A stretch of DNA of 64,000 nucleotides. It comes from Ostrea edulis (Eukaryota). The notes below the pieces were generated by a model. The model did not search any database. It was not told the DNA's origin and worked only from the letters and a program-made list of their open reading frames with translations. The position numbers were made by a program, and so were the translations under genes. Below are positions 5,130-41,119 of the stretch, piece after piece; the first letter of the stretch is position 1; each line of letters starts with the position of its first letter. The DNA lies in the NCBI RefSeq assembly GCF_947568905.1, contig NC_079170.1, positions 15,810,001 to 15,874,000 of the forward strand, written 5' to 3'.

Positions 5130-5197
<68 letters not shown>

Positions 5198-7458: not shown

Positions 7459-7506
<48 letters not shown>

Positions 7507-9860: not shown

Positions 9861-9904
9861 GATATGGAAGACTCTATTTTCTGATATTATCACCTACTTT
9901 CGGA

Positions 9905-11430: not shown

Positions 11431-11819
11431 AGCATTTTTTGGAATGGCCGGATGTTTTTCACATGCTTCAATCATATACACTCTGGTCAATCTATTAGTG
11501 ATGGGCCTTTATCGTGCTAAAATCCTCTATGACATGGGATCTCAGTTTTAAATATTCGAAATACCCATGACCTATACTTTTAATGCCAAACACTAGGAAT
11601 AGTTACTACCCATATTTAACCATATGCATTCTCAATTTCTCATCAAACATCCTCACTACTGAAGAACACAATACATTGGTCTACATTTGCAAATCTAGAT
11701 CTTATGCTAAAAAGGGCTTCATACGGACGTCAAATCACAAAATCAAACAAACAATGCAGGATTTATGACATTTTACTGCACATATCTAAAGCTACGTATA
11801 AATCATAATGTTTGAACCT

Positions 11820-14800
11820 TCAGCTACAACCATTATCGTTTTGTATTAATAAATATTCTTTTCCCAATGCATAGTATTTATCACTTCCTGCACTACCTGT
11901 TGGCGAAGTTTTCGTCCGGTCCTTTGACTTTATAGAAGAACTCTCTGCATGAAATAAAAATGAATCTAAAGAAGGATTTCCTGAATGGATGATAACGAAT
12001 TTCCCAAATGAGCTGCCACTTTGAAGTTCGCTCTCCTTTCTCTCGAGTTTACAGCTGTATGCTAGGACATCGCTGGACAAAAACACACTTACATCCATGC
12101 CCATACTCTTCCTCTCTTCCAATCCACCTAGGTGGTGGTAAATGTTTTCTCATGATCTAGAACTCGATGAACTATCATCTTTGTAAGAAGGAACTTGAAT
12201 AGCTTTATTCATCACCTAGTGAGAGAAGAAAAATCACAAAATTCAAATCAATGAAATATTTTTCTCGTTTGGATTACGACCAATTAATGAAAATGAACAG
12301 TGATTAATCTCATAAATATCATGGCAATCTAACATCAAGGACATGCCCAATGCACATTTCCTATACATGATACAGGTGAGATCGAGTGACTAGGAGGAAT
12401 AAGCACCCCGTTTTGACCGGTCACACCCGTCGTGAGTCCTGTATCTTGATTATGTAAATGGAGTCAGCCGTATTCAAATCGACACAGAAAGAATGTAGAC
12501 TACATTTGACTTTATGACATGGAGTATTATTATACCACAGTATGAGAATTCCACGCAACGCGTAATGTGATTAGTCTAGACGGTCACGTGCCAGGGATGA
12601 CAACACTTCATATCTCCCTCTCAAACATCATATCTCCCTATCATATTTAGCCCTTGGGCAGACTCGTGCAATTTCCATAAATTTAACGTCAAGGTAGACG
12701 AAGTCTATTGTGACGTCACAATAAGTCATTCTACTTTCACAGTTCGTAAGGCAGAAAATATGTGGGTCTCTAATACACAGTTGAATCGTATGGTTTTGGT
12801 TGATACAAAAACAAGCAAGTAAATTAGCATTTAAGGAGAATGGAAATACAAAAACTGGTTATCATATCACTGTATTTCGTATGATTTTTCTTGGGTGAAT
12901 AAATCTTCATATCTCCCTCACTATCATGCAATAAATGTATAATAGCAAATAAGATGGTTTTAACAACCGTAGCCTTTACAAAGTGTTGCCTGTAAACAAG
13001 ATAGACAAGACTTGTCCATGTCTTCGCTTTTAAAGATCACCATAAAAACATTTCTTTTAAAATCTATGACTCGGAATAATGTACTCTAAAATTATCTTCG
13101 ATACCAGCATATTCTGCCTCTAATGGATTGATGATGACTCTGCCCTCAGGTAAACCACTTCTCTCTTGGTGACTAGGCTGATAGGATACTGGTGACGGGA
13201 ATCGATTGCTAAACAAATAAAATCATTGATACTATTTGATAATTTTAAATGTAATCACTGAGTCAAAACATCATGTTTCTAGATAGCGCAGATTTCATGG
13301 AAGTTTTCTAAATCTAAATTTTTCCTAATTTATTGAAACGCTGAACAGTTGTGTTGTATGTACATAAAAATGAAGCCACGGACTATGGAAATTAAACTAA
13401 AATGGGAAAATGGAGGTTGTGAAACAACAAAAATGAAATAATTCCACAAGATACATATAACTTTTTTATATGACGATCAGTTTTCTGTGTATATGGGAAG
13501 AGAAATGATATATGTACTAAACTAGTAGGAAACAGTTTAATTGGTGAAGCAAAATATAAGAGAATCATGAATCTCTTGTAAAATATCAGAGAATCATGAA
13601 TCTCTTGTAACAAGTGCATATATATTTTCAAATGAGGGAATGCCTTAGAGGACAGGACATACTCTTTGTGCCGATTCAGGAGGTTGTAAATCACACGTAG
13701 GATTCCAATTCCAAAGAGACACCCGACAACGAAGCAGGTCACAATTAGGACAGCAATTATACCTGGACCTTGGATTAAATAAAAGGAAAGTTCTTACAAA
13801 CGCTAAATGGTTATCAAATATATCAGAATGATTTTGATATGAAATTGGAATGTAATAACTTACCAAGACATTCATTTTCATTCTCGTTGTTGTGTTCGAA
13901 TATATCGAGACGGTCTGTATTCTTGCCCTGCGTCCAACATTCAATGATTATGTTTTCGATTATGCACTTTTCAATACCACATAGACTGTCTGTCATCTGC
14001 GTTGATTTCGTTTCATTATAGTGAAAATTGATTTTGTATTCAACACAATGAGATTGCTCAAATAGATCATCATTGAATACATATATTGCTTTGCATGACA
14101 CCGAACATGTATTGTTACCTGAAAAAAAAATATATCGTGTTGATGTCATTGTTTTCTTTCATCAAAAAGTGGCAAATAATGAAAGAAATCGTTATGAAAT
14201 GATCCTACCTTTGTGTCTATTTGATATATCCGGTAGAGGACAGTTTTGGTCGGGCATCGTTGCATGCACTTGTAAAGCTTGTTCCAAACATATTTTTCTG
14301 AAGTTTTACAAAACATATTGGTACCGTATAAGTTTTACATTGAAAAGAAACGTATGAGGTGAAAACAAATGTGTATGTATCTAATATGATCGTATTAAAC
14401 AAGAATTAGAATCTTATATATCGTTTAAACACACCTTTCATTTTGGGGAAAGCACAGGACTTTCTTAGGAATATCCATCGTGAAGCACAGAATAACACCT
14501 GCGTTGTATTGAAATAATGTTTGGATGAAATAAAGATGAAATGAATTCTGATAAAAAATAAAGATGTAAAAGATTGAATCATAATCAATAGATCCCATAA
14601 CGGATTTATGCTACAGAAAATAGTTTTTTGTTTGTAAATCAGGATTTAGGTTATGAAAGGCCTGGTTTAAAACCAGAATTTCACAAATATAACAGGTCAT
14701 TAAGTCGAATGCTCTCTGACGTGTTTCATACCAATTGTTAGACGGATCTTTACATACAGAGTTTTACTACGAATTACTCAGTTTATCTGATAAGATATAG

Positions 14801-15366
14801 GGCATATAACATTTATGACCGTTGAACAGACAATATTTACTCCCCCTAGACATCTGCTCCCAATTCTGGTGTTTCCAGGGGCCCGTGTTTACCAACTCAT
14901 AATTTTATATCATTTATTGGATTCAATATAACAAACAGTGAGGAATCACACAATTCTATATTACACTGCATCATATCACTTTGTGAATCATCTCAGATCA
15001 CTAAATAAAGTTAGTAGTGTTATCCACTGAAACGCAGAATTCATGGCTCTGAGGGACATCTTCAGATTGATTCATTCATGACTTTGCAATCAATATGATT
15101 GTGTCCATATTTATACACTTAGCTATACTTAGTTGTATAAGGTATCTCATCATGTTATTTCATAATCCTCCCTTAAAAGCCAACCACCCACTGTCGGTTG
15201 TGCTTGATCAGAATTATAATGCTCTCACTGTGCGAGCAATACAAATCTATAATCGTTAGAAGCTATTGCGTGAATAGAAAGATTCATTTTCAACTTTTAA
15301 ACTTCCACACGTTATTTCTAATTAGTGACAATTGTACTTACATAAACATCGCCTTAGATCTGTCAT
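11820..15366 (-). CDS. Gene B1: family member with a premature stop in the last exon (242 aa truncated; 352 aa if read through)
   Basis: Exons: 15366-15342, 14498-14435, 14297-14209, 14118-13864, 13768-13663, 13208-13085, 12215-11820. Phases match A1. MTDLRRCLCVILCFTMDIPKKVLCFPQNERKICLEQALQVH...NCP...TCSVSC...HCVEY...LCGIEKC...ECW...NECLGPGIIAVLIVTCFVVGCLFGIGILR...EYAGIEDNFRVMNKAIQVPS...SRS* with TGA at 12152-12150 (CGA in B3). Confidence 0.8.
14690..14910 (+). mobile_element. Penelope-like 3' fragment in intron 1 of the B genes (copies at about 35515-35735, 40535-40760)
   Basis: GAATGCTCTCTGACGTGTTTCATACCAATTGTTAG...CCAGGGGCCCGTGTTTACCAACTC. Confidence 0.65.
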
Positions 15367-17639: not shown

Positions 17640-17830
17640 CTTTCATTATATTGAGATATCACTAGCTGTAGGTGAAGTACCACAAAATTAGACCTATACT
17701 TAGCCCTCAGGGCCGTAGAAATGAGGGTTCTTTAACGTGCCACCGTCTGCCGTGACACGGGACCTCCGTTTTAAAGGTAATATCCAAAAGACCTGTGATT
17801 CTCACTTTTGAATACCAAGCGTTTGACAAA
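17640..17830 (-). mobile_element. SINE fragment nested in the TTAA element
   Basis: CCACAAAATTAGACCTATACT...GTGCCACCGTCTGCCGTGACACGGGACCTCCGTTTT matches the reverse complement of 6090-6232. Confidence 0.55.
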
Positions 17831-18084
17831 TAAGCAATCATTGTTAATTGGAGAAAAATCCTGCATTCAAACATTTTCTCAGTAATGCTTGATGTATATA
17901 CATGTACATGTGACTTTTATTTGGTTTACAACAATTTTCAGATGCTCTGGACTACCCCCCCCCCCCCCAAAGAAAAAAACTTCATTGTATAAATCTTAAT
18001 CTTAGCCTGAGATTGCACAACATATCTTTGAAAATTAAAGAAACGAAGGGATTAGTAGAAATTAAATGATTTTTGTTGTTGGTT

Positions 18085-18325
18085 GGTTGATTGATATTGT
18101 CTAACGTTTTCCACTTACACGAAGACGTCATCATCGGCAGTGGAAAGATTGCAAAATTTAGGTCAATGCGCGGCGGTTGGGCCTTTGAGTACACGTAGGA
18201 ATGGATCTTTATTGTGTCACACCTGCTGCGACAAGGGGCCTTGGGTTTTGCGGTCTCATCCGAAGGAACACCCCCATTTAATCGCCTTTTACGACAAGCA
18301 AGGGGTATTGAGGTCAATTTTCTAC
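18085..18325 (-). mobile_element. Near-complete mollusc SINE (Meta/MESC-type) nested in the TTAA element
   Basis: The reverse complement matches 46045-46290: ...CCCCTTGCTTGTCGTAAAAGGCGA...TTCGGATGAGACCGCAAAACCC..., with an AACC/AATC-type tail. Confidence 0.7.
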
Positions 18326-22998: not shown

Positions 22999-24711
22999 GA
23001 GAATATTCTCGTTCTATTTTATTTTTCACGGAATGGATGATAAAGTGAAGATAATGAACAGTATACTTATCTTATAAATACCACAAGAATACAAAACTGA
23101 GAGTAGGTCAACTACTGATCCTAGGATATACTACGGGAGGGATCTCGTGACTAGGAAGAGTAAGCATCCCCTGTTGACTGGTGACACCCACCGAGAGCCT
23201 TATATTTGGATCAGGTAAATGGAGTAATCCGAAGTCAAAATCAGTGTGCAAATGATGGTCTAGCAATTAGTATGAAACACGTCAAACAGCGTTCTGCCGT
23301 ATGATAGGTCGTACTTGCAAATTAGAACATCATAATGAAATAGCATTTGCAAAGTGCTGACATTAAACGAGACAGTTGGAATACCTGAAACATTATTTGT
23401 CTTTAATCTGTAGCGATTTAAAAATCGATCATACGCAGGACATCTTTCCGCATATCAATCAGTTGAGAGATGTAAAAAACATTATGAGGGAATATTACAA
23501 GATGACTATGGGAAGGTGACGCTGGAATAGGTCGTTTGTCATGAATATCAGTGGTCTGATTGACGTTAGTGTCTATGTTCAATAAATAATCCAACTATTG
23601 ATCAGATATGGAAGACTCTATTTTCTCATATCATCACCGGTGTTAGAACGACTTTACTCAATTTGAGAGATTCATAAGAGCTTTTTTGTCTGTCTTTGAT
23701 TATTTATGTGATAACTGTTTTGAATGGATTTTAGTGTCGGTCAAACAATAATCAATGAACTTAGACGGATAGTCTAAAATTGTCAGTGACGAAAGTGCTG
23801 TTAACATTTTTCAGAAATGTGTAGAAGGGTATTTTCTAAAAGACTTCCGGATTCTTGACAATTAAATACAAAATTTCTATTTCCCAATCCTAAACAATTT
23901 TTCATTCACTTAAGAAATGTAACTTATCATTCTTTATCTGATGCATATATCAAATGAAAAACTGGACGGAAAACTTCCGAAAGGAAATTTTCCGTCTCAC
24001 AATTTTTCAGCCATATTGAATTTCTCAGTGCATTTACCAATGCATGCCATGTATATGGTGTAAAAGATGTACACCAAAACGTGTACACCTTTGCACTACG
24101 GAAAGATGTACACTTTTTAGTTGGTGTAGACAAATCTAGCCCGCCGTTAGTAAAGGAGTCTGTAAAATATCACGTACGTCTTGTCAGTCTAACCAGTTGG
24201 TATATGCATAGATCGAATAGAAGAAGATAGTCAGGGAAACAGCTTATGTCATCAAATTATATCTGGATAAGCAAACTAAAAAAATTAACGATGCATGCCG
24301 ACTCAATGATTATCATACAAAGATTAAGAATTGATATTGAAAATTTTCACTCATATATGCTCCTTTTAAACTGGATAAGTCCAGAGTGGAACATTATGGA
24401 TCATATTCAAATAAATTGATAGACGCGTGCACGGATCAGTTTAATGTTATATTTCTGACCCAAATATACGTAGGTGTGTCCTGCAATGAATTCTAAAAAA
24501 TAATAAATGACATTAAATGGAGGAATTGAATCAGGTCGTGTGCATCTTGTACTTTGTGTATAATTATGGCAAATTGATAATTTCCAATTCTAAATATATA
24601 ACTAATTAGTGAAATGATCATTAACGATACAAAACAATTTAAATGCAAGATCATTTTAGCCCTAATGATAAAAACAGGCATTGACCTACATCTATTTGAT
24701 AAAGGAAATTG

Positions 24712-26345
24712 ATGGTATCCTCTATTTGATGCTTTCAACTTCATGAATGAGCAAAGTTCAATAGCTGTATAATCAAATTCTATTTTTCTGCTGATCTTTG
24801 CTGGTAATGAACTTTGCCTTTTGGCATCCTCTTAGAATGTACCACCCTTATGGAAAACAGCTAAAGGAACATACGATGTTATCATTACTATACACTCTAT
24901 GTAACACTCCAACAAAAGTTCCAATAAGTAACTGTTACCATTTAGATATTGAATAAATCTCTGATATTATTCACAATTGATTGATTGGCAATCATTGATT
25001 TGTAAACAGTGGGGTGTTTATCACGATCCTGCATCTGCCTCTCTTGGAAATTATACTGCAGAAATGAATACCAGCTGGAACATAATACTCAATATATATC
25101 ATTCATTGAATTATTCATAACATTGTCCGGTCGTTTTTCAAGTTCATAATATCTTTTGCTTTCATCACTTCCTCTTCGTGCTGCATTGTCGTTAAGATAA
25201 CTCCCCGCTGATGATCGGCTACTTCCCCTTGAAGTTTTGTTGATGATAGAATTATCTGAGGCACTACTCGTTCTTGAACTTGGTTTCTGAATGAAGCTTG
25301 TTGAATGAAAGTTGTACACTTTATCACTGAGTTCATGATATACGTTCGAGCTCCTCGATCGGACACTTGTCGGGCTCTTGTCGTAAAGTGATGGTACTTG
25401 TGTTGCTTTTACAGCCATCTGTTAACGAAAAATGTACGCGTCTACATATATCAGTAATTCAATATCTTACAATACTTCAGAGAGAGTTGTATATTACCTG
25501 AAATGATGCAAACATACCCTTTCTCAATAAAGATCTATAATCTTTCAGTCTGTTTTAACTTCATTACCACGTGTTTCATGAGAGGTCTTAAAGTTCATGA
25601 TTTTCAAACAAACTGTTAAGTCTATGCTAGCTAAGATAAGAAATTATAGTTCTTTTTACCTTGACAGTGTCTTCGACATCACTATACACATGAAAATTAT
25701 CCAAAATGATTGCTTGATTTGGGTTACTAAACATAGGTGGTGTTTGTGTGTTGCCTCTGCTAAAATATAAAAGATATTTTCCTTTTACACAGTTCGCAAT
25801 ATTCTGAAGGTACATCCACCGAAATAATTGATTAAAAAAAGAGCACAGAAAAAGGAATTGATTCTTTGTTTTCAAGTGACATAATGAGATAAACGGAGAA
25901 AGGAAGATATAATGACATCCTTCTCAGATACTGACTGTGATCTGTGCTTGTACCATCGTATGGTCAAAGTAAGTAAGATACCAACGACACAACCTGCTAT
26001 TCCGCAGCTGAAGGCCAGAATCCAATCTAGACATAAGTTTGAAATGAAAATTTTAATAACCATACATACATTTATTTGCATTCATATTAATATTTACTCC
26101 TTTTTGTTTACATCATATCCATTTCAGGTTGATAAGAAGAAAGAAAAAACACGTATTTGAACAAAATGCATTCAAAATGTGAATGTTTACTACTAAATAA
26201 TTATAAACGATAAAGCCTTATTTGACAACAGTTTGGCTGTTAAGGACTATTTTTTGTTGTGTAGAAATTTTGTAAAGATAACACTAAAAACTTTGATATC
26301 TTTTAATTATCAAACAGTGCGCTTTGGCAATTTGTTAATGAAAAG

Positions 26346-26403
<58 letters not shown>

Positions 26404-28663
26404 AAGATATATCAAAGAGCACCAAGGTAAATTTTACAAATCGTGAGATCGTAATCTAACTAACTTTTAATTATGCAATATTTGCATAAAGTAGAATTTT
26501 TATAATGAAATACTCGTCCTCTCTTTACATATAAAGGATTACCTGGATGGTTTGTTAAATCACTAATGCTTGAAACGCCAATTACAGTGATATTTTCTGC
26601 AAAATGATACATAAGCAAAATGATACATCAACAATTTTTAGATCAAAGGTGAAGATAACGAACAGTGATCAATCTCATAACTCCTATAACCAATACAAAA
26701 TAGATATTTGGGCAAACACGGACCCCTGGACACACCAGAGTTCGGATCAGGTGCCTAGGAGGAGTAAGCATCCCCTGTCGACCAGTCACACCCGCCATGA
26801 GCCCTATATCCTGATCAGGTAAACGGAGTTATCCGTAGTCGAAATCAGTATGTTAGGAGGGGCCTAACAATCGATATAAAACACGTCAGACAACATTTGA
26901 TCCAATGATAGGTTGTATTGATGGACTAGATTGTTATAACGACCATAGAATTTGCAAAATGCTGACTTCAATCGATGCTGTTGAAACTGGATCGCACGCA
27001 CACGTACGAATGCATACACATTACACACATTCTTTTTTTTTTAATCTGAGTACAATTTCAAACTCTGAACACTTTCTTGATTTTTTTCAGCCGTGTTTCT
27101 GGTCTTCGTCAGGCGTGAACCACAATTTGGATGGCTATGAACACCAAGAATTTTGATGGTTTTCTACGTCCCTCAACCTTCATAAATCGAGAGGCTGTGT
27201 ATTCGAGCCATGTTCGCGCCATGATACAACAATTTAATATACTCCTTACTATATTCCTTACTATACCTAGGATATCGGTAAGATTGCTTCTTCGCCAAGC
27301 GCTTAACACTTAGTGAGAATCATGGGCCTTTCGGATATGACATTAAAAACGGAGGTCCCATGTCACGGCAGGCGTTGGCAAGTTAAAGCACACTTACTGC
27401 CACGGCCCTGAGCGCTAACCATAGGTCTAAATCTGTTGTATATAATCTACAGCTGAATGTGTGTATCAGTATATCAGGAAAACATTCTCGACGAGACGTA
27501 AAACAAACAATAAATTAATTAATTCATACAACGACACAGAAAAAAGATTGTCTTTGAAAAACTTACCATTTTGATCTCTTAAATCACAGGTTATAGAGAT
27601 CCAGGTCATTATGCACTTTGATATATTACAGTGTTTTGCGTTGAAAATGGAGGTGTTACTTCGTTGGTTCAACAGAAGCTCTAGGGTGTAGCTGACACAA
27701 TGTGCCTCATCGTGTAAAGAATTGTTACTTTCAAATTGGCCGCTGCAGTTTATTGTACAGACCCTGGCTATAGAAATAAAGAAATACAGTGTTTAACGAA
27801 TTTCCGAAGCTTAAGTTAAAATAATAATTACTGGTGAATGTAATATCTAAAATGATTTAGTTTGAACCATTTTCTTGAAGTTTGTCGTAAGGGCAGCGTT
27901 GTTGTGATAATTCGTCGTGAATGTTGATTGCATCCTCAAAGCACCAGTTGCTTTTAAACCTGGGAAGTGGAATTCAGAAATCATCGTTAGGGTAACTGGG
28001 AATCAAATTTAAAGGAAATCCATGGGTGCATATTTAAGTATGTCAATGAATTTTAGAAAGTATGGAACTCACGACGGCAAGACAGTTGATGACATAGAGA
28101 ATATACCGCCTCCCGCTATCTTGACCCAAACCAATAAATCTGAAATAAATGTTGTCAAGAAATACTTACATATTATGAATTTATAAATGACAAGCTTGCC
28201 ATATATATAAAAAAAATTGTAGGATGACAACAATATGATTTGTATAAGATCTGCATGTTTTCAAAAGAAAACGACCCTGGATGTTGAGGAATGCAATAAA
28301 ATGTTGTGCAGAAATTTCTATTTTTATATTCAAGCAACAATATAGTGTCGATACATGTATATTTATTAAAATCTCTACGTTCAGAATAAAGATGACTGCA
28401 AAACAAAGCATATATACTAAAGTATTAATAATATAAGCTTGGAAAAAATGAAACGCCTCATGATATATTACTCAGTTCTTTTGATTTCGTACTTTACCAT
28501 GAATGGTAAATTCTAATAGAATTATGGATAAATTTAATCAGTGCATTCCAAAAAACTGATACATTTTTCATTATTAAATTGACTAGGAAAAATATATTTC
28601 CTGATCTTCAGGTAATTGATTAAATGACACCAATAGTGAAAAAATTGGGGTTTTGTGGGGGGA

Positions 28664-28706
<43 letters not shown>

Positions 28707-31700
28707 CGATACAGTATGTATGAAATGTGAAGATAACGAACAGTCCCTTATGTAGTATACATATATCCCTGTGAGTTCGAAGCAAAAGACACCACTGAGT
28801 CGTCCACTTCTGCTTCATACTTAGATATTTTATTGAAAGTAGACATTAATGGCAAACTGACTGCTCAACTGTATATGACAAACGAGATGATTTCAGCTTC
28901 TCCATCGTCAACTTCCCATATTTATGTAGCAATATTCCATTATCACCTGCATATGGTCTTTATATCTCTCAATTGATTTGATAGGCAAGAGCTTGTTCTG
29001 TATTTGGTCAGTTTTTAAATCAAGGCCAGTTACTGACAAACAACTTGATGGTACAGGGGTTTCAACAGTCTCGATTGAAGTAGCATTTTGCACCGAATTT
29101 ACTGAATGCCAACACTGGATTTTCACTCAAATCTTTCGTCTTGCATAAATAGACACGAAGTTCGGTGTTTATATGACCGTATCTTTTTGTTTTTGATGTA
29201 TATACTATGTACATTTATAATAAATATATCAATTTTTGCCGTGCATTTTTCAGGCAAATCTTTATGATATTTCATTAAACTTCACCTAAATGGATTTCCC
29301 GCTATTTTCTGCAGCCATGAAATTTGCTCTTGATGTACAAAAAATAGTGTGCCCGTTTTATTTCATAGAATTAACACTATCGACAAACAAATAAATAAAC
29401 ATAACACATTCAACATGGATTGAATATTCCTTTGCGCGTGGAACAAAAATGAAAAATTTGTCAATGCCCTCGAAAAATTGATTCATTTATGACTTTGCAA
29501 TCAATATGATTGTGTCCATATTTATACGCTTAGTTATGCTTAGTTGTATAAGATATGTCATCATTTTATTTTATAATCCTCCCTTAAAATCTAACCACCC
29601 ACTGTCGGTTATGTTTGATTACAATTATGATGCTCTCACTGTGCGAGAAATACAAACCTAGAATTGTTAGAAGCTACTGCGTGAACAGAAAGATTCATTT
29701 TCAACTTTTTAATTTTTACACTTTATTTCTAATTAGTGACAATTGTACTTACATAAACATCGCCTTAGATATGCCATTGTCTCTTTCCAAATATCGCCTC
29801 AATTGCTTAATTTTTACGATGGAAATTTCTAATAGTAAGGAAAAGGTATTAACACAGCTTTTTACACATCAAAAGCCATGGAAAACACTGAACAAGTTCT
29901 TCCTGGTCAAACAAGATATATGCGAGTTTGTGGAATTACCCATCCATGGAGTTAATACTGCGGAAGCAATTAAAAGTTAAATGTTTCTTTCCAGAGGTTA
30001 ATGTTACATTATTTTTCTATTTCTATAGGAACCATATCTCCATCTACATCAGAAGCATTTGCAAAAGTCAGGAATCCTGCTATTTCTGTTAGATCAAGGG
30101 AAGGGATTATTCTCACTGCTGATAGATCACACAAAAGAGAATTTTCTTGTTCTATTTCATTTTTCACGGAATGGATGATAAAGTGAAAATAATGAACGGT
30201 GACCAATCTTATAAATACCATACGATTACAAAATTGAGAGTAGGTCAAATCCTTGGGTATACTAAGTGTGGGATCTGATGTCTAGGAGGAGTAAGCATCC
30301 CCTGTTGACTTGTGACACCCACCGTGAGCCCTATATTTGGATCAGGTCAATGGAGTAATCCGAAGTCAAAATCAGTATGTAAATGATGACCTAGCAATTA
30401 GTATGAAATACGTCAGACAGCGTTCTGCCGTATAATAGGTCGTACTTGCAAATTAGAACATCATAATGACATAGCATTTGCAAAGTGCTGACTTTAAACG
30501 AGACAGTTGATATACCTGAAACATCAACATTACTTGTCATTAATCTCTCTCGAGTTAAAAATCGATCATACGCAGAAGATTTTTCCGCATATCAATCAGT
30601 TGAGAGGTGTAAAAACCATATTCAGGTGATGAGGGAATATTACTACATGACTATGGGAAGGTGATGCTGGAATAGGTGATGTCATCCCGTTTGTCGTGAA
30701 TTGATCAGATATGGAAGACTCTATTTTCTGATATTATCACCTACTTTCGGAAGGTCGGTGGTCTCTTCCCAGGTGCATTGTATCCGGGTTCTCTCTTCCA
30801 CCAACAAAAACTGGGCGCCACCATATAACTGAAAAATTGTTGAATAGGGCGGAAAACATCAAATCAAATCAAATCATATTATCACCGGTGTTAGAACGAC
30901 TTTACTCAATCTGAGAGAGTCATAGAGCTTTTTTGTCTTTCACTGCTGCAACGTCTTTGATTGTTTATGTGATGACTATTTTGAATGAATTTTAGTGTCG
31001 GTCAAACAGTAATTAATGATCTTAGACGGATAGTCTAAAATTGTCAGTTAGATTTTAATGAAAGTGGTGAAAGTGCTGTTAGCATTTCTCAAAAATGTGT
31101 AAAAGGGTATTTTCTAAAAGACTTCCGGATTCTTGACAATTAAATATAACATTTCTATTTCCCAATCCTAAACAATTTTTCATTCACTTAAGAAATGAAA
31201 GTTATAATTCTATATCTGATGCATGTATCAAATGAAAAACTGGACGGAAAACTTCTGAAAGGAAATTTTCCGTTTCACAATTTGTCAGCCGTATTGAATT
31301 TCTCGGTGCTTTTACCAACGCATGTATTGTACATGGTGTAGAAGATGTACACCAAAATGTGTACACCTTTGCATTTGATTACGAAAAGGTGTACACTTTG
31401 TGGTCGGTGTAGACAAATCAAGCACACCCTTAGTAAAGGAGACTGTAAAACAACGAATTGCAATATATCAAATACATACCATACAGAATTCCGAAAATTC
31501 AAAAGGTTAAAATCTCGCTAAATTATAAAACTATGATATTTGACATATATTGCGCTATCTTTCTTTGACAGACTAACTGCATACGTTAAGAATATAGACA
31601 ATGTAACGCTATAATGTAAAGTTCATATCTTAATGTCAATGATATTGACATGAGATGCATTGAAGGATATATTGCACTGGTTAATGAGAAACTACACACG

Positions 31701-34660
31701 AGTTATTGAAACTCGTAATTGTAGAATCCATGTCTATCGCAACGGGGACTCTAATCCACGAGCTTAACTTCTCCAAGCGTGGGATGTAACTCTGATTTCA
31801 ATAAATGCTCCATGGACCTCATCACCAATAAATAACATTTAGCCATGGGTGTATGTGTTCTTTTGTCCGCTCATTTGATTAGTTGATTATTAAGATTTTT
31901 ACGCCCTCTCAAAAATGGAAAGGTCAAGCTAACAAACTGTTATCGATGAAAGGTGAAAATAACGAAAAGTAATCAATATCATAACTCCTATAAGGAAATC
32001 AAAATAAAGAGTAGGGCAAACACAGACCTTTGGAACCAGGTGCCTAGGAGGAGTAAATATCTTCTGTCGACTGGTCACACTCGTTGTGAGCCCTATATCT
32101 CGATCAGACAAACGGGGTAATTTGTAGTCAGAATCAGTGTGTCACGATTGGTTTACCAATCGCAGAATTTGATGCAATGACAGTTTGTATAAACTATTGG
32201 CAAACTAGTTTGTTATAACGACCATAGAGTTGGAAAGATTGTGACAGTAAACGAGGCTGTTGAAACCCCTGTAGCATTTTTTGGAATGGCCGGATGTTTT
32301 TCACATGCTTCAATCATATACACTCTGGTCAATCTATTAGTGATGGGCCTTTATCGTGCTAAAATCCTCTATGACATGGGATCTCAGTTTTAAATATTCG
32401 AAATACCCATGACCTATACTTTTAATGCCAAACACTAGGAATAGTTACTACCCATATTTAACCATATGCATTCTCAATTTCTCATCAAACATCCTCACTA
32501 CTGAAGAACACAATACATTGGTCTACATTTGCAAATCTAGATCTTATGCTAAAAAGGGCTTCATACGGACGTCAAATCACAAAATCAAACAAACAATGCA
32601 GGATTTATGACATTTTACTGCACATATCTAAAGCTACGTATAAATCATAATGTTTGAACCTTCAGCTACAACCATTATCGTTTTGTATTAATAAATATTC
32701 TTTTCCCAATGCATAGTATTTATCACTTCCTGCACTACCTGTTGGCGAAGTTTTCGTCCGGTCCTTTGACTTTATAGAAGAACTCTCTGCATGAAATAAA
32801 AATGAATCTAAAGAAGGATTTCCTGAATGGATGATAACGAATTTCCCAGATGAGCTGCCACTTTGAAGTTCGCTCTCCTTTCTCTCGAGTTTACAGCTGT
32901 ATGCTAGGACATCGCTGGACAAAAACACACTTACATCTATGCCCATACTCTTCCTCTCTTCCAATCCACCTAGGTGGTGGTAAATGTTTTCTCATGATCT
33001 AGAACTCGATGAACTATCATCTTTGTAAGAAGGAACTTGAATAGCTTTATTGATCACCTAGTGAGAGAAGAAAAATCACAAAATTCAAATCAATGAAATA
33101 TTTTTCTCGTTTGGATTACGACCAATTAATGAAAATGAACAGTGATTAATCTCATAAATATCATGGAAATCTAACATCAAGGACATGACCAATGCACATT
33201 CCCTATACATGATACAGGTGAGATCGAGTGACTAGGAGGAATAAGCACCCCGTTTTGACCGGTCACACCCGTCGTGAGTCCTGTATCTTGATTATGTAAA
33301 TGGAGTCAGCCGTATTCAAATCGACACAGAAAGAATGTAGACTACATTTGACTTGATGACATGGAGTATTATTATACCACAGTATGAGAATTCCACGCAA
33401 CGCGTAATGTGATTAGTCTAGACGGTCACGTGCCAGGGATGACAACACTTCATATCTCCCTCTCAAACATCATATCTCCCTATCATATTTAGCCCTTGGG
33501 CAGACTCGTGCAATTTCCATAAATTTAACGTCAAGGTAGACGAAGTCTATTGTGACGTCACAATAAGTCATTCTACTTTCACAGTTCGTAAGGCAGAAAA
33601 TATGTGGGTCTCTAATACACAGTTGAATCGTATGGTTTTGGTTGATACAAAAACAAGCAAGTAAATTAGCATTTAAGGAGAATGGAAATACAAAAACTGG
33701 TTATCATATCACTGTATTTCGTATGATTTTTCTTGGGTGAATAAATCTTCATATCTCCCTCACTATCATGCAATAAATGTATAATAGCAAATAAGATGGT
33801 TTTAACAACCGTAGCCTTTACAAAGTGTTGCCTGTAAACAAGATAGACAAGACTTGTCCATGTCTTCGCTTTTAAAGATCACCATAAAAACATTTCTTTT
33901 AAAATCTATGACTCGGAATAATGTACTCTAAAATTATCTTCGATACCAGCATATTCTGCCTCTAATGGATTGATGATGACTCTGCCCTCAGGTAAACCAC
34001 TTCTCTCTTGGTGACTAGGCTGATAGGATACTGGTGACGGGAATCGATTGCTAAACAAATAAAATCATTGATACTATTTGATAATTTTAAATGTAATCAC
34101 TGAGTCAAAACATCATGTTTCTAGATAGCGCAGATTTCATGGAAGTTTTCTAAATCTAAATTTTTCCTAATTTATTGAAACGCTGAACAGTTGTGTTGTA
34201 TGTACATAAAAATGAAGCCACGGACTATGGAAATTAAACTAAAATGGGAAAATGGAGGTTGTGAAACAACAAAAATGAAATAATTCCACAAGATACATAT
34301 AACTTTTTTATATGACGATCAGTTTTCTGTGTATATGGGAAGAGAAATGATATATGTACTAAACTAGTAGGAAACAGTTTAATTGGTGAAGCAAAATATA
34401 AGAGAATCATGAATCTCTTGTAAAATATCAGAGAATCATGAATCTCTTGTAACAAGTGCATATATATTTTCAAATGAGGGAATGCCTTAGAGGACAGGAC
34501 ATACTCTTTGTGCCGATTCAGGAGGTTGTAATTCACACGTAGGATTCCAATTCCAAAGAGACACCCGACAACGAAGCAGGTCACAATTAGGACAGCAATT
34601 ATACCTGGACCTTGGATTAAATAAAAGGAAAGTTCTTACAAACGCTAAATGGTTATCAAA
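24712..34660. repeat. Segmental duplication, copy 2
   Basis: Near-identical to 3494-13830 (see that feature). Confidence 0.95.
25089..29777 (-). CDS. Gene A2: near-identical paralog or allele of A1, about 301 aa
   Basis: Exons: 29777-29753, 28139-28073, 27959-27868, 27767-27567, 26026-25936, 25759-25660, 25418-25089. The frame is open. Differences from A1 seen by eye: T2A, L>V in exon 2, T>I and G>S in exon 7. Confidence 0.83.
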
Positions 34661-36193
34661 TACATCAGAATGATTTTGATATGAAATTGGAATGTAATAA
34701 CTTACCAAGACATTCATTTCCATTCTCTTTGTTGTGTTCGAATATATTAAGCTGGTCTGGATTGTTGCCCTGCGTCCAACATTCAATGGTTATATTTTCG
34801 ATTATGCACTTTTTAATATCACATAGACTGTCTGTCATCTGTGTTGATTTCATTTCATTATAGTGAAAATTGATTTTGTATTCAACACAATGATCTTTAT
34901 CGAATAGATCATTATTGAACACATATATTGCTTTGCATGACATCGAACATGTATTATTACCTAAAATAAAAAAAAATATATCGTGTTGATGTCATTGTTT
35001 TCTTTCATCAAAAAGTGGCAAATAATGAAAGAAATCGCTATGAATAGATCCTACCTTTGTGCCTATTTGATAGATCCTGTAGAGGACAGTTTTGGTCGGC
35101 CATCATTGCATGCACTTGTAAAGCTTGTTCCAAACATATTTTCCTGAAGTTTTACAAAACGTATTGAAAAGAAAAGTATGAGGTGAAAACAAATGTGTAT
35201 GTATCTAATATGATCGTTTTAAACAAGAATTAGAATCTTATATATCGTTTAAACAAACCTTTCATTTTGGGGAAAGCACAGGACTTTCTTAGGAATATCC
35301 ATCGTGAAGCACAGAATAACACCTGTGTTGTATTGAAATAATGTATGGATGAAATAAAGATGAAATGAATTCTGTTGAAAAATAAAGATGTAAAAGATTG
35401 AATCATAATCAATAGATCCCATAACGGATTTATGCTACAGAAAATAGTTTTTTGTTTGTAAATCAGGATTTAGGTTATGAAAGGCCTGGTTTAAAACCAG
35501 AATTTCACAAATATAACAGGTCATTAAGTCGAATGCTCTCTGACGTGTTTCATACCAATTGTTAGACGGATCTTTACATACCGATTTTTACTACGAATTA
35601 CTCAGTTTATCTGATAAGATATAGGGCATATAACATTTATGACCGTTGAACAGAGAATATTTACTCCCCCTAGACATCTGCTCCCAACTCTGGTGTTTCC
35701 AGGGGCCCGTGTTTACCAACTCATAATTTTATATCATTTATTGGATTCAATATAACAAACAGTGAGGAATCACACAATTCTATATTACACTGCATCATAT
35801 TACTTTGTGAATCATCTCAGATCACTAAATAAAGTTAGTAGTGTTATCCACTGAAACGCAGAATTCATGGCTCTGAGGGACATCTTCAGATTGATTCATT
35901 CATTACTTTGCAATCAATACGATTGTGTTCATATTTATACACTTAGCTATATTTAGTTTTATAAGGTATTATCTCATCATTTTATTTCATAATCCTCCCT
36001 TAAAAGGTAACCACCCACTGTCGGTTGTGCTTAATCACAATTATGATGCTCTCACTGTGCGAGCTATACAAACCTATAATCGTTAGAAGCTATTACGTGA
36101 ATAGAAAGATTCATTTTCAACTTTTAAACTTCCACACTTTATTTCTGATTAAGGACAATTGTACTTACATAAACATCGCCTTAGATATGTCAT
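32662..36193 (-). CDS. Gene B2: mosaic family member with the same premature stop as B1
   Basis: Exons: 36193-36169, 35322-35259, 35143-35055, 34960-34706, 34610-34505, 34050-33927, 33057-32662. TGA at 32994-32992. Exons 5-7 match B1, exons 2-4 match B3, and exon 1 is A-type (MTYLRRCL). Confidence 0.8.
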
Positions 36194-36482
36194 TGTCTTT
36201 TTCCAAATATCGCCTCGATTGCTTAATATTTACAATGAAAATTTCTAATAGTAAGGAAGAGGTATCAGAACAGCTTTTTCCACATCAAAAGCCGTGGAAA
36301 ACACTGAACAAGTTCTTCCTGGTTGAACAAGAAATATGCGAGTTTGTGGAATTACCCATCCATGGAGTTAATACTGCGGAAGCAATTAAAAGTTAAATGT
36401 GTCTTTCCAGAGGTTAATGTTACATTATTTTTCTATTTCTATAGTAACCATATTTCCATCTATATCACAGGAGCATTTGCAA

Positions 36483-36625
36483 AGGTAAGGAATCCTGCCA
36501 TTTCTGTCAGATCAAGAGAAGGGGTTATTCTCACTGCTGATAGATCACACAAAAGTCAGGAATCTTGCTATTTCTGTTAGATCAAGGGAAGGGATTATTT
36601 TCACTGCTGATACATCACACAAAAG
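36483..36625. repeat. Two copies of the 70-bp unit upstream of B2
   Basis: A diverged pair of the same unit found as 27 copies at 21109-22998 and as single copies at about 9220 and 30067. Confidence 0.85.
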
Positions 36626-38122
36626 AGAATATTCTTGTTCTATTTTATTTTTCACGGAATGGATGAGAAAGTGAAGATAATGAACAGTATACTGATCCTA
36701 GGATATACTACGTGTGGGATCTCGTGTCTAGGAGGAGTAAGCATCCCCTGTTGACCGGCCACAACCACCGTGAGCCATATATTTGGATCAGGTAAATGGA
36801 GTAATCCGAAGTCAAAATCAGTATGTAAATGATGGCCTAGCAGTTAGTATGAAACACGTCAGACAGAGTTCTGCCTTATGATAGGTCGTACTTGCAAATT
36901 AGAACATCATAATGACATAGCATTTGCAAAGTGCTGACTTTAAACGAGACAGTTGAAATACCTGAAACATCAACATTAGTTGTCATTAATCTGTATCGAT
37001 TTTAAAATCGAACATGCGCAGGACATCCTTCCGCATATCAATCAGTTGAGAGATGTAAAAACCATCTTCAGGTGATGAGGGAATATTACTACATGACTGA
37101 GGGAAGGAGACGCTGGAATAGGTGATGTCATCCCGTTTGTCGTGAATATCAGTGGTCTGATTGACGTTAGTGTCTATGTTCATTAAATAATGAAACGATT
37201 GAATAATCCAACTATTGCTCAGATATGGAAGACTATTTTCTCATATTATCACCGGTGTTAGAACGACTTTACTCAATTTGAGTCATAAGAGCGTGTTTGT
37301 CTTTCACTGCTGCAACGTCTTTGATTGTTTATGTGATAACTGTTTTGAATGAATTTTAGTGTCGGTCAAACAATAATCAATGAAAATTGTCAGTTAGATT
37401 TTAATGAAAGTGATGAAAGTGGTGTTAACATATTTCAGAAATGTGTAAAAGGGTATTTTCTCAAAGACTTCCGGATTCTTGACAATTCAATTTAAAATTT
37501 CTATTTCCCAATCCTAAACAATTTTTCATTCACTTAAGAGATGTAACTGATAAATCTTTATCTGATGCATGTATCAAACAAAAACTGGACGGGAAACTTC
37601 CGAAAGGAAATTTTCCGTCTCACAAATTTTCAGCCATATTGAATTCCTCGGTGCATTTACCAATACATGCCATGTATATGGTGTAAAAGATGTACACCAA
37701 AACGTGTACACCTTTGCACTACGGGAAGCTGATTGTTTTCTCATGCTTCAAGCGTATACACTCTGGTCAATCTATTAGTGAGGGGTCTTGATCGTGATAA
37801 AATCTACCATGATACGGGATCTCAGTTTTAAATATTCGAAATACCCACGGCCTACACTTTTGATGCCAAGCACTTGGAATAGTTGGAACCCATATTTAAC
37901 CATATACATTCGCATCAAATATCCTGAAGAACACATAACATTGGTCTAGATTTGCAACACTAGATTTAAGCTGGCAATAGTGCAAATTCAAGAGAGCTCC
38001 TCATACGGACGTCAAGTCACAGACACAAACAAATTTATTTATCAAACAACAAACAATACAAGGTATTATGACATTTTACTTCAAATATCTAAACCTACAT
38101 ATGAATTAAAATGTTTGGACCT

Positions 38123-41119
38123 TCAGCTACAACCATTATCGTTTTGTATTAATAAATATTCTTTTTCCAATGCATAGTATTTATCACTTCCTGCACTACC
38201 TGTTGGCGAAGTTTTCGACCGGTCCTTTGACTTTATAGAAGAATTCTCTGCATGAAATAAAAATGAATCTAAAGAAGGATTTCCTGAATGGATGATAACG
38301 GATTTCACAGATGAGCTGCCACTTTGAAGTTCGCTCTCCTTTCTCTCGAGTTTACAGCTGTATGCTAGGGCATCGCTGGACAAAAACACACTTACATCCC
38401 TGCCCATACTCTTCCTCTCTTCCAATCCACCTAAGTGGTGGTAAATGTTTTCTCGTGATCTAGAACTCGATGAACTATCTTCTTTGTAAGAAGGAACTTG
38501 AATAGCTTTATTCATCACCTGGTGAGAAAAGAAAAATCACGAAAATTCAAATCAAAGAAATATTTTTCTCGTTTGGATTACGACCAATTAATGAAATTGA
38601 ACAGTGATTAATCTCATAAATATCATGGAAATCTAACATCAAGGGCATGACCAACGCACATTCCCTAGACATGATACAGGTGAGATCGAGTGACTAGGAG
38701 GAATAAGCGCCCCCTTTTGACCGGTCACACCCGTCGTGAGTCCTGTATCTTGATTATGTAAATGGAGTCAGCCGTATTCAAATCGATACAGAAAGAATGT
38801 AGACAACATTTGACTTTATGACATGGCGTATTAGGAAATAAGATGGATTTAACAACCATAGCCTTTACAAAGTGTTGCCTGTGAACAAGATAGATAAGAC
38901 TTTTCGATGCCTTCGCTTTTAAAGATCATTATAGAATATTTCTTTTAAAATCTATGGCTCGGAATACTGTACCCTAAAATGATCTTCGATATCAGCGTAT
39001 TCTGCCTCTAATGGATTGATGATGAGTCTGCCCTCAGGTAAACCACTTCTCTCTTGGTGACTAGGCTGATAGGATACTGTTGACGGGAATCGATTGCTAA
39101 ACAAATAAAATCATTGATAATATTTGATAATTTTAAATTTAATCACTGAGTCAAAACATTATGTTTCTAGATAGCGCAGATTTCATGGAAGTTTTCTAAA
39201 TCTAAATTTTTCCTAATTTATTGAAACGCTGAAAAGTTGTGTTGTATATACATACAAATGAAGCTACGAACTATGGAAATTAAGCAAAAATGGGAAAACG
39301 AAGGTTGTGAAACAACAAAAATGAAATAATTCCACAAGATGCATATCACTTTTTTATATGACGATCAGTTTTCTATACATGTATATGGGAAGAAAAATGA
39401 CCTATGTACTAAACTAGTAGAAAACAGGTTAATTTTTGAAGCAAAATATCAGAGAATTAGGAATCTCTTGTAACAAGTGCATATAGATTTTCAAATGAGG
39501 GAATGCCTTAGAGGACAGTACATACTCTTTGTGCCGATTCAGGAGGTTGTAAATCACACGTAGGATCCCAATTCCAAAGAGACACCCGACAACGAAGCAG
39601 GTCACAATTAGGACAGCAATTATACCTGGACCTTGGATTAAATAAAAGGAAAGTTCTTACAAACGCTAAATGGTTATCAAATACATCAGAATGATTTTGA
39701 TATGAAATTGGAATGTAATAACTTACCAAGACATTCATTTCCATTCTCTTTGTTGTGTTCGAATATATTAAGCTGGTCTGGATTGTTGCCCTGCGTCCAA
39801 CATTCAATGGTTATATTTTCGATTATGCACTTTTTAATATCACATAGACTGTCTGTCATCTGTGTTGATTTCATTTCATTATAGTGAAAATTGATTTTGT
39901 ATTCAACACAATGATCTTTATCGAATAGATCATTATTGAACACATATATTGCTTTGCATGACATCGAACATGTATTATTACCTAAAATAAAAAAAAATAT
40001 ATCGTGTTGATGTCATTGTTTTCTTTCATCAAAAAGTGGCAAATAATGAAAGAAATCGCTATGAATAGATCCTACCTTTGTGCCTATTTGATAGATCCTG
40101 TAGAGGACAGTTTTGGTCGGCCATCATTGCATGCACTTGTAAAGCTTGTTCCAAACATATTTTCCTGAAGTTTTACAAAACGTATTGAAAAGAAAAGTAT
40201 GAGGTGAAAACAAATGTGTATGTATCTAATATGATCGTTTTAAACAAGAATTAGAATCTTATATATCGTTTAAACAAACCTTTCATTTTGGGGAAAGCAC
40301 AGGACTTTCTTAGGAATATCCATCGTGAAGCACAGAATAACACCTGTGTTGTATTGAAATAATGTATGGATGAAATAAAGATGAAATGAATTCTGTTGAA
40401 AAATAAAGATGTAAAAGATTGAATCATAATCAATAGATCCCATAACGGATTTATGCTACAGAAAATAGTTTTTTGTTTGTAAATCAGGATTTAGGTTATG
40501 AAAGGCCTGGTTTAAAACCAGAATTTCACAAATATAACAGGTCATTAAGTCGAATGCTCTCTGACGTGTTTCATACCAATTGTTAGACGGATCTTTACAT
40601 ACCGATTTTTACTACGAATTACTCAGTTTATCTGATAAGATATAGGACCCATAACATCTATGACCGTTGAACAGAGAATATTTACTCCCCCTAGACATCT
40701 GATCCCAACTCTTGTGTTTCCAGGGACCCGTGTTTACCAACTCATAATTTTATATCATTTATTGGATTCAATATAACAAACAGTGAGGAATCACACAATT
40801 CTATATTACACTGCATCATATTACTTTGTGAATCATCTCAGATCACTAAATAAAGTTAGTAGTGTTATCCACTGAAACGCAGAATTCATGGCTCTGAGGG
40901 ACACAAATGATTTCCATACCAACGAAGATTTAAATGAAAGAGATCCTACATCAACTTTAGCAGTGTATCGACAAGTAAACTAATATTCGCCCTGTCCCAT
41001 GTTAGACTTATAAGCTTACCCACATCAATATAGTGTGTAGTTATTGTTATCACCGTACCAAAATTTATATAATCACAAACAACAACAAACTCACCAATTA
41101 ATGTGTATCCCATGTCCAT
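38123..41119 (-). CDS. Gene B3: full-length B-type receptor, about 352 aa
   Basis: Exons: 41119-41095, 40343-40280, 40164-40076, 39981-39727, 39631-39526, 39096-38973, 38518-38123. Exon 1 is 25 nt (MDMGYTLI+G) with a GTGAGT donor. The tail contains EYADI, IYHHL, YYAL and EYLLI. A TATA-like TATATAAA lies at 41218-41211. Exon 1 is the least certain part. Confidence 0.82.

What the first reader, a model, noticed from the sequence alone, without database searches (positions are those of the whole stretch)
34660..35600. Apparent gene-conversion tract limited to the ectodomain exons (B2 identical to B3 over exons 2-4)
B2 follows B1 almost exactly up to the TM exon (GGATTCCAATT at about 34545). It matches B3 from about 34660 to 35600 (offset 5021 to 39681-40620). 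It then returns to B1-type variants (GGGCATATAACATTT, GCTCCC, GGGGCC) from about 35620. The exchanged segment covers exons 2-4, so a B3-type ectodomain is joined to the truncated tail. Ectodomain homogenisation between partners is typical of vertebrate paired receptors (established); its relevance here is inferred, and the direction of exchange is unknown.
Basis: partly seen in the sequence, partly recalled or inferred. Interest (0 to 1): 0.72.

Follow-up and report, generated by a model that had tools for sequence, protein, structure and literature searches.

The report
Recent gene conversion between oyster receptor paralogs
About 1 kb of one oyster membrane-receptor gene, covering its outer-domain exons, was recently overwritten by its neighbour 5 kb away, which is a clean but ordinary gene conversion in a tandem gene cluster.

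Summary
B2 and B3 are letter-for-letter identical over 34547-35625 (1079 bp, offset 5021). Their flanks differ by 2.7-7.4% in substitutions, and the left flanks also carry indels. B2 otherwise tracks B1, and a fourth copy B0 found upstream, at about 99%.

Inside the tract, 42 substitution sites and 2 indels group B2 with B3 against B0 and B1. No site contradicts this (0 of 200,000 permutations reach the run; Fisher 6e-35).

The gene lies on the minus strand. My splice model puts exons 2, 3 and 4 inside the tract. Exon 1 (signal peptide) and the informative part of the TM exon lie outside. The swap changes 19 residues (4 in exon 3, 15 in exon 4).

The copying was non-reciprocal. It most likely ran from B3 to B2. 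It is younger than the B1/B2 homogenisation.

B0, B1 and B2 share a CGA>TGA stop, so a B3-type outer domain now sits on a tail-truncated gene.

The paired-receptor analogy is not supported. The TM segment has no charged residue and the tail has no canonical ITIM or ITAM. In the unconverted copies the ectodomain exons are the most diverged part. An assembly artefact is unlikely but was not excluded with reads. The scan found other conversion patches in this genome before.

The parts
34547..35625 (-). Maximal conversion tract in B2 (the acceptor): an exact 1079-bp match to B3
   Evidence: 0 mismatches to 39568-40646. The run ends at 34546 and 35626, where B2 returns to the B0/B1 state.
34663..35582 (-). 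Minimal tract, from the first to the last site where B0=B1 differ from B2=B3
   Evidence: 41 aabb sites plus 1 abcc site, and indels of 4 bp (34964-34967) and 22 bp (at 35162). No contrary site.
39568..40646 (-). Donor stretch in B3 (full-length tail copy)
   Evidence: The flanks of this stretch are B3-specific (12|3 sites at 39567 and 40647).
13705..14801 (-). Unconverted homologous stretch in B1. B0 at L022:7489-8586 (approximate) is the same type.
   Evidence: B1 versus B2 has 44 substitutions and 26 gap columns here, against 0.1-1.2% in the flanks. B0 versus B1 is 0.4%.
34547..34662 (.). Left breakpoint zone: a 116-bp block identical in all four copies (3' end of intron 4 plus the first 64 nt of the TM exon)
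   Evidence: the second-longest B1/B3 identity block in the 3.6-kb alignment.
35583..35625 (.). Right breakpoint zone (43 bp) in intron 1. It sits inside an interspersed repeat and next to the longest B1/B3 identity block (35378-35581, 204 bp).
   Evidence: for the blocks. for the repeat: query positions 1105-1346 correspond to 35504-35745.
35826..35883 (-). Predicted exon 1 (MSLRAMNSAFQWITLLTLF, signal peptide), outside the tract
   Evidence: ATG and GT donor, phase 1. B3 has GTG at the first codon and would start at Met6.
35259..35322 (-). Predicted exon 2 (64 nt), inside the tract, identical in all four copies
   Evidence: AG/GT sites, and the phase chain closes; a 69-bp perfectly conserved block 35257-35325.
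35055..35143 (-). Exon 3 (89 nt), inside the tract. Four residues differ between the B1 type and the B3 type.
   Evidence: homologous to gene A's exon (36% amino-acid identity), with AG/GT sites.
34706..34960 (-). Exon 4 (255 nt, cysteine-rich), inside the tract. Fifteen residues differ; the cysteines are kept. The NET sequon is lost and an NIT sequon is gained.
34505..34610 (-). Exon 5 (TM, GIIAVLIVTCFVVGCLFGIGIL). Its informative sites 34546 and 34532 lie outside the tract.
32992..32994 (-). TGA stop shared by B0, B1 and B2 (CGA in B3), which truncates the tail
   Evidence: alignment; ORFs: 109 aa versus 137 aa in B3.
35504..35745 (.). Unclassified interspersed repeat, present in all four B copies
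   Evidence: 36 of the 40 scored genome matches are copies of it on other chromosomes, at 76-81% identity. No Rfam hit and no inverted repeats.

Best explanation
This is a non-allelic (interlocus) gene conversion between two directly oriented tandem paralogs 5 kb apart. They belong to a small, unnamed family of cysteine-rich single-pass membrane proteins in an oyster genome.

A break in B2 was repaired using B3 as the template. This copied 920-1079 bp, comprising part of intron 1, exons 2-4 with their introns, and at most the first 64 nt of the TM exon. B3 was left unchanged.

The result is a chimeric gene. It has the B0/B1-type promoter-proximal region and signal exon, a B3-type ectodomain (19 residues changed; one N-glycosylation sequon lost and one gained), a B0/B1-type TM exon, and the tail truncated by the shared TGA.

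Both ends of the tract lie in or beside the two longest stretches of perfect B1/B3 identity, as homology-dependent repair predicts.

The event is very recent, with 0 differences in 1079 bp. It most likely reflects neutral concerted evolution in a recombination-prone cluster rather than a selected mechanism.

Shown here: the tract, its limits, its non-reciprocity and its coding consequences. Inferred: the direction, the repair mechanism, neutrality and the splice model.
For: - Exact 1079-bp B2=B3 run.
- Within the tract, 42 substitution sites plus 2 indels have the pattern B0=B1 versus B2=B3, and none contradicts it. Outside, 128 sites are B0=B1=B2 versus B3 and only 4 are aabb.
- Permutation test 0 of 200,000; Fisher 5.6e-35.
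- Non-reciprocal: B3 carries the same sequence rather than the B1 type.
- Direction: the immediate flanks of B2 are 99-100% B1-type (1 difference in 765 bp on the left, 3 in 257 bp on the right).
- Only four copies of this DNA exist in the 895-Mb assembly. All nine exon-4-like matches lie in one 80-kb cluster, and the next relatives are about 30% identical in protein, so there is no alternative donor.
- Timing: B1-B2 divergence outside the tract is 0.90% (56 of 6214), which predicts about 9.7 differences in 1079 bp. None is seen (Poisson p about 6e-5).
- Breakpoints fall in a 116-bp block and beside a 204-bp block.
- B2, the converted copy, is the one nearest to B3.
- The gene model is phase-consistent with AG/GT at every junction in all four copies.
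- Against an artefact: B2-private variants anchor both sides closely (34532 on the left; 34 differences from B1 in 35904-36389 on the right).
- A short-read contig from another run (Logan SRR25445037, 1092 bp) is B3-type across the tract and B1/B2-type at 34546 and 34498.
Against: - No reads were available, so the assembly could not be checked directly.
- The Logan contig crosses a 116-bp block shared by all copies, and it carries A rather than B2's T at 34532. Bubble-popping in a de Bruijn graph could therefore mimic the chimera.
- The direction rests on parsimony and breakpoint coincidence, not on an outgroup.
- The locus has a more complex history than a simple duplication. The B-upstream module is about 7% diverged between B1 and B2 although the gene bodies differ by 0.9%.
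- Two extra B2=B3 sites at 35655 and 35801 suggest that the right edge may be ragged.
- Exons 1 and 2 are predicted without transcript or homology support.
Confidence: 0.85

Rival explanations
1. Assembly or consensus artefact: B3 sequence was wrongly written into B2 during assembly or polishing, and the real B2 is B1-type throughout.
For: Oyster genomes are highly heterozygous and repeat-rich. The tract is perfectly identical to a copy only 5 kb away. No read data could be examined. The only outside contig is not decisive.
Against: An artefact would need two switch points 1 kb apart. Misjoins give one. B2-private variants lie 15 bp to the left (34532) and 280 bp to the right (35904 onward) of the tract. 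Any long read anchored in B2 therefore spans the tract, and polishing has no reason to prefer B3 reads there. The window has no N and no gap. The breakpoints fall in identity blocks, as biology predicts. The Logan contig is purely B3-type at all tract sites and B1/B2-type to the left.
Confidence: 0.05
2. Opposite direction. The tract is original B2 sequence that escaped the recent homogenisation of the [A B] units, and it was later copied from B2 into B3.
For: The B-upstream module shows that the B1 and B2 units have an old component, about 7% diverged. The bodies were therefore homogenised secondarily, and a gap in that event is conceivable. The divergence of the tract from B1 (4.1%) fits either origin.
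Against: The gap in homogenisation and the later B2-to-B3 tract would have to share both ends, within 116 bp on the left and 43 bp on the right. That is roughly a 0.5% coincidence under uniform placement. It would also leave an isolated 280-bp homogenised island at 35626-35903, and it requires one more event than the B3-to-B2 model.
Confidence: 0.07
3. Selected 'merohomogenisation'. B2 (truncated tail) and B3 (full tail) act as a receptor pair, and conversion keeps their ligand-binding domains in step, as in vertebrate paired receptors.
For: The tract covers the three ectodomain exons and excludes the signal exon and the informative part of the TM exon. The partners differ in tail length. Ectodomain-restricted homogenisation is documented for KLRC, Ly49 and PIR (PMC3210942), SIGLEC11/16 (PMC5701461) and CEACAMs (PMC5112662, PMC2832619; abstracts).
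Against: Only one event is seen, and B0 and B1 are unconverted. Between the unconverted copies and B3, exons 3-4 are the most diverged part (8.1%, versus 2.5% for the introns in the tract; pN/pS about 0.6). The TM segment has no charged residue and there is no canonical ITIM or ITAM. The truncation is a simple nonsense change that an earlier follow-up read as incipient decay. A 1-kb tract would cover exactly these exons by chance about 6% of the time, by my estimate.
Confidence: 0.1

Closest known systems
Interlocus (ectopic) gene conversion between tandem paralogs, for example the human gamma-globin pair and CYP21A2/CYP21A1P (from general knowledge)
   Same: A contiguous non-reciprocal tract of about 1 kb with sharp ends, between nearby directly repeated paralogs that are over 90% identical. 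The tract and its flanks give different trees. The breakpoints lie in identity blocks.
   Different: The genes belong to an unnamed mollusc-restricted family. Two unconverted sister copies (B0, B1) survive in the same array and show the state before the event.
Merohomogenisation of ligand-binding domains in paired opposing leukocyte receptors (Fossum et al. 2011, PMC3210942); SIGLEC11/16 (PMC5701461); CEACAM pairs (PMC2832619, PMC5112662); KIR2DS4 (PMC2768862)
   Same: The exchange is confined to ectodomain exons between neighbouring genes with different cytoplasmic tails. In the human SIGLEC11 case one partner is a non-functional allele (SIGLEC16P).
   Different: There is no evidence of opposing signalling (no charged TM residue, no ITIM or ITAM). 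The ectodomain is not an Ig or lectin domain (Pfam found nothing). The exchange is a single recent event rather than repeated ones. Unconverted copies show ectodomain exons more diverged than introns, not less.
Other conversion patches noted by this scan in the same genome (NWD1-like pair, 174 bp; TLR pair, 138 bp)
   Same: Same genome, immune-type tandem genes, perfectly or nearly identical patches attributed to gene conversion.
   Different: This tract is 6-8 times longer, spans three exons and their introns, and can be polarised and dated against sister copies.

Membership tests
Interlocus gene conversion | A contiguous tract of much higher identity between two paralogs, bounded on both sides by ordinary divergence | tested here: met
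   0 differences in 1079 bp, against 6.6-7.4% (left) and 2.7% (right) for B2-B3. Permutation 0 of 200,000.
Interlocus gene conversion | Phylogenetic incongruence between the tract and its flanks | tested here: met
   Flanks: 128 sites are (B0,B1,B2)|B3. Tract: 42 sites are (B0,B1)|(B2,B3) and none contradicts this.
Interlocus gene conversion | Non-reciprocal: the donor is unchanged | tested here: met
   B3 carries the same tract as B2, not the B1 type that a reciprocal double crossover would leave.
Interlocus gene conversion | The tract is real in the organism and not an assembly product | not testable with these tools
   No reads were available. Indirect support comes from B2-private variants on both sides and one compatible but non-decisive Logan contig.
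Paired (activating/inhibitory or decoy) receptors | Closely linked genes with near-identical ectodomains | tested here: met
   B2 and B3 are 5 kb apart, and exons 2-4 are identical.
Paired (activating/inhibitory or decoy) receptors | Opposing signalling parts: ITIM in one partner, and a charged TM residue or ITAM adaptor coupling in the other | tested here: not met
   The TM segment GIIAVLIVTCFVVGCLFGIGIL is uncharged and identical in both genes; B2 differs only by the juxtamembrane I>N at 34532. The tail motifs EYADI, IYHHL, YYAL and YLLI do not fit the ITIM consensus or ITAM spacing (read by eye). The difference between partners is a nonsense codon.
Paired (activating/inhibitory or decoy) receptors | Sustained homogenisation of the ligand-binding domain relative to the rest of the gene | tested here: not met
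   For B0/B1 against B3, exons 3-4 are 8.1% diverged, introns in the tract 2.5%, the TM exon 1 of 106 and exon 2 0 of 64.
Paired (activating/inhibitory or decoy) receptors | Co-expression and a shared ligand | not testable with these tools
   No expression or binding data.

The most novel reading that the evidence does not exclude
B2/B3 is a mollusc counterpart of vertebrate paired receptors. A tail-truncated copy is kept, or was newly brought, into ligand-binding step with the full-length receptor by ectodomain-limited conversion. This would mean that 'merohomogenisation' logic evolved independently in a lophotrochozoan, non-Ig receptor family.
Probability: 0.08. Interest if true: 0.6.

Novelty: new member of a known kind. 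Interest (0 to 1): 0.3.

Why it matters
This is a very clean natural example of interlocus gene conversion. The tract is exact. Its ends are resolved to 116 bp and 43 bp. Donor and acceptor can be inferred, and two unconverted sister copies in the same array show the prior state.

It shows that in this oyster receptor cluster a whole divergent ectodomain, 19 residues and a glycosylation-site swap, can move between genes with different tails in one step. Together with the homogenised [A B] units and the swapped upstream modules, it marks the cluster as recombinationally active.

It does not reveal a new mechanism, and conversion patches have already been seen elsewhere in this genome. Its value is mainly for annotating this family. 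It also warns that trees built from ectodomain exons will mislead.

Tried and rejected
- Pfam on eight exon-like ORFs: nothing significant.
- ESM Atlas look-alikes of the exon-4 peptide: best score 0.77, no family.
- Word search with the 108-aa exon-4 ORF: one hit only, a 92-aa ORF on a 1092-bp Logan contig. Full-length proteins were out of the tool's length range.
- That contig has the B2-like chimeric pattern. I do not count it as proof. A 116-bp block shared by all copies separates the informative sites, and it has A at 34532 where the assembly's B2 has T.
- Junction-spanning pattern in JGI metagenome contigs: 0 hits, uninformative.
- Paper search for the run accession: 0 hits.
- Rfam and an inverted-repeat scan over the right breakpoint repeat: nothing.
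- tblastn of exon 1 and exon 2 peptides against gene A: no credible match, so those two exons rest on splice sites, phase and conservation only.
- Strong purifying selection as the cause of the identity: rejected, because the introns are identical too and B0/B1 differ.
- A reciprocal double crossover: rejected, because B3 equals B2.
- B2 and B3 being misplaced alleles: rejected, because of 7% flank divergence with many indels and unrelated upstream regions.
Exons were handled one by one by reference.
Full report
**Layout of the locus.** The window contains no N. Self-comparison shows a 12-kb unit [gene A + gene B] present twice, at 3491-15562 and 24709-36389, 98-99% identical. A third, older B copy (B3) lies at 37736-40903 and is 89-94% identical to B1. 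A whole-genome search found a fourth copy, B0, 12.7 kb before the window. It belongs to a third [A B] unit that is 99.5% identical to the B1 unit. No further copy of this DNA exists in the 895-Mb assembly. At the protein level, the exon-4 domain gives nine matches, all in one 80-kb cluster on the same chromosome. Four are B-type, three are A-type at about 33% identity, and two are more distant. Earlier notes of this scan identify the genome as an oyster, the European flat oyster according to one note, and call the family oyster-only. I did not test the species name.

**The observation.**
- In three- and four-way alignments, B2 follows B0/B1 almost exactly up to 34546: 1 difference in 765 bp immediately to the left.
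- B2 is then identical to B3 from 34547 to 35625, an exact run of 1079 bp at offset 5021.
- B2 returns to B0/B1-type variants at 35626, 35628, 35629, 35637, 35681, 35692 and 35705.
- Within the tract, 42 substitution sites, a 4-bp indel and a 22-bp indel group B2 with B3 against both B0 and B1. No site says otherwise.
- Outside the tract, 128 sites group B0, B1 and B2 against B3. Only four show the tract pattern.
- A GENECONV-style permutation of the 184 informative substitution sites never produced a run longer than 14, against the observed 44 (0 of 200,000). Inside versus outside gives Fisher p = 5.6e-35.

**Gene model.** The gene is on the minus strand. No Pfam family matches any exon-like ORF. 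I derived the model from three lines of evidence: homology to gene A for exons 3 and 4, canonical AG/GT sites in all four copies, and a closed phase chain.

| Exon | Coordinates (minus strand) | Note |
|---|---|---|
| 1 | 35883-35826 | MSLRAMNSAFQWITLLTLF, signal peptide |
| 2 | 35322-35259 | |
| 3 | 35143-35055 | |
| 4 | 34960-34706 | cysteine-rich |
| 5 | 34610-34505 | TM, GIIAVLIVTCFVVGCLFGIGIL |

- Exons 2-4 lie inside the tract.
- Exons 1 and 2 have no homology or transcript support. Exon 2 does coincide with a 69-bp block conserved perfectly among all copies.
- B0, B1 and B2 share TGA where B3 has CGA, at B2 32992-32994. I did not re-derive the splicing of the cytoplasmic exons.

**Coding consequences.**
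- Exon 2 is identical in all copies.
- Exon 3 differs at 4 residues and exon 4 at 15 of 84 residues between the B0/B1 type and the B3 type.
- All cysteines are kept. B0 has one extra cysteine.
- An N-E-T sequon is lost and an N-I-T sequon is gained. Many of the changes alter charge.
- Nei-Gojobori counts for exons 3-4 give pN 0.074, pS 0.124 and a ratio of about 0.6.
- The exons in the tract are more diverged than its introns: 29 of 472 sites against 15 of 603. The ectodomain is therefore the fast-evolving part of these genes, not a part kept similar.

**Mechanism, direction and age.**
- B3 carries the same sequence as B2, not the B1 type, so the exchange was non-reciprocal. That makes it gene conversion rather than a double crossover.
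- B2's flanks are B1-type on both sides, B0 and B1 retain the alternative type, and no other donor exists. The simplest history is that B3 overwrote B2.
- The reverse direction would require the tract to be original B2 sequence that escaped the recent homogenisation of the units, and then a B2-to-B3 tract with both ends coinciding within 116 bp and 43 bp. I put that at about 7%.
- B1-B2 divergence outside the tract is 0.90%. That predicts about 9.7 differences in 1079 bp, and none is seen, so the conversion is much younger than the homogenisation of the units. It is not clearly younger than the B0/B1 split (0.23%, about 2.4 differences expected).
- The left end falls in the second-longest block of perfect B1/B3 identity (116 bp, covering the intron 4/TM exon junction). 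The right end lies just beyond the longest block (204 bp). This fits homology-dependent repair, for example synthesis-dependent strand annealing after a break in B2. That mechanism is inferred, not shown.
- The right end lies inside an old, unclassified interspersed repeat at 35504-35745. It accounts for 36 of the 40 scored genome matches, at 76-81% identity, and has no Rfam hit or inverted repeats.
- Two further B2=B3 sites at 35655 and 35801 may mark a ragged, patch-repaired edge.
- B2 is the B-type copy nearest to B3.

**Artefact?** I could not inspect reads.
- Against an artefact: two switch points 1 kb apart are not what misjoins produce.
- B2-private variants sit 15 bp to the left and from 280 bp to the right of the tract, so long reads are uniquely anchored.
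- One contig from an unrelated short-read run (Logan SRR25445037) is B3-type at every tract site it covers (34663-35557) and B1/B2-type at 34546 and 34498.
- That contig is compatible with the chimera but not decisive. A 116-bp block common to all copies separates the two kinds of site, and the contig has A at 34532 where the assembly's B2 has T.
- I put the chance of an artefact at about 5%.

**Meaning.** Ectodomain-restricted homogenisation is well documented for vertebrate paired receptors (PMC3210942, where it is termed 'merohomogenization'; PMC5701461). Here the resemblance is limited to the position of the tract and the unequal tails.
- The TM segment is uncharged and identical in both genes.
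- The tail tyrosine motifs are not canonical ITIM or ITAM.
- The truncation is a plain nonsense codon shared by three copies, of which only one is converted.
- In the unconverted copies the ectodomain exons are the most diverged segment.
- By my estimate, a 1-kb tract would cover exactly these exons by chance about 6% of the time.

The most likely reading is an ordinary, probably neutral, conversion in a recombination-prone tandem cluster. The scan has already found shorter conversion patches in NWD1-like and TLR pairs of this genome.

**Verdict.** The conversion reading is supported and sharpened in direction, age, limits and consequences. The paired-receptor analogy is not supported. This is a new member of a known kind, of modest interest.

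Noticed in passing
window 35883-36389 (B2) versus 15059-15562 (B1): B1-B2 divergence jumps from 0.9% to about 7% (34 differences in 457 bp) from 35904 onward. This is the A-like upstream module, which begins at 35883, exactly at the predicted ATG. The site patterns interleave (21 B2-unique, 12 B0/B1-unique, about 35 all-B versus A), and no closer donor exists in the genome (best 93%). The [A B] units therefore appear to have been homogenised recently over at least 11 kb, while their B-upstream modules stayed old.
   Followed up: partly
window 15562-23153: In B1 (and B0) the upstream module is interrupted at 15562 by about 5.4 kb and resumes at 21010-21184. A 70-bp motif from that module is then amplified into an array of about 30 copies (20964-23153). 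B2 keeps the module intact, with only a few degenerate copies of the motif (36340-36709).
   Followed up: partly
window 34706-35143: Between the B0/B1 type and the B3 type, exons 3-4 are more diverged (8.1%; pS 0.12) than the neighbouring introns (2.5%). This could reflect deeper ancestry or diversifying pressure on the ectodomain, or earlier homogenisation of the introns. The counts are small.
   Followed up: partly
window 33188, 33201, 35655, 35801: Four isolated sites outside the tract also show B0=B1 versus B2=B3, interleaved with B3-private sites. They may be short patchy conversions, a ragged tract edge, or changes on the B0/B1 ancestral branch.
   Followed up: no
window 40902-40904: B3 has GTG where B0-B2 have the predicted start ATG, and B3's homology to the other copies ends exactly there. 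B3 would have to start at the in-frame Met six codons downstream (40889-40887).
   Followed up: partly
window 35504-35745: An unclassified interspersed repeat of about 240 bp. It accounts for 36 of the 40 scored genome matches, on other chromosomes, at 76-81% identity. It has no Rfam match and no terminal inverted repeats. It is present in all four B copies, and related copies lie in gene A's introns (26641-27040).
   Followed up: partly
L022:7649-7900 (B0 exon 4) versus window 13865-14116 (B1): B0 has an extra cysteine (EQCHC) where B1 has serine (EQSHC). B2 has a private I>N change just after the TM segment (34532).
   Followed up: no
G000:C7:15770940-15849979: All nine exon-4-like matches in the 895-Mb genome lie in this single 80-kb cluster: four B-type, three A-type and two more distant. 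The family is therefore tiny and local in this assembly.
   Followed up: partly
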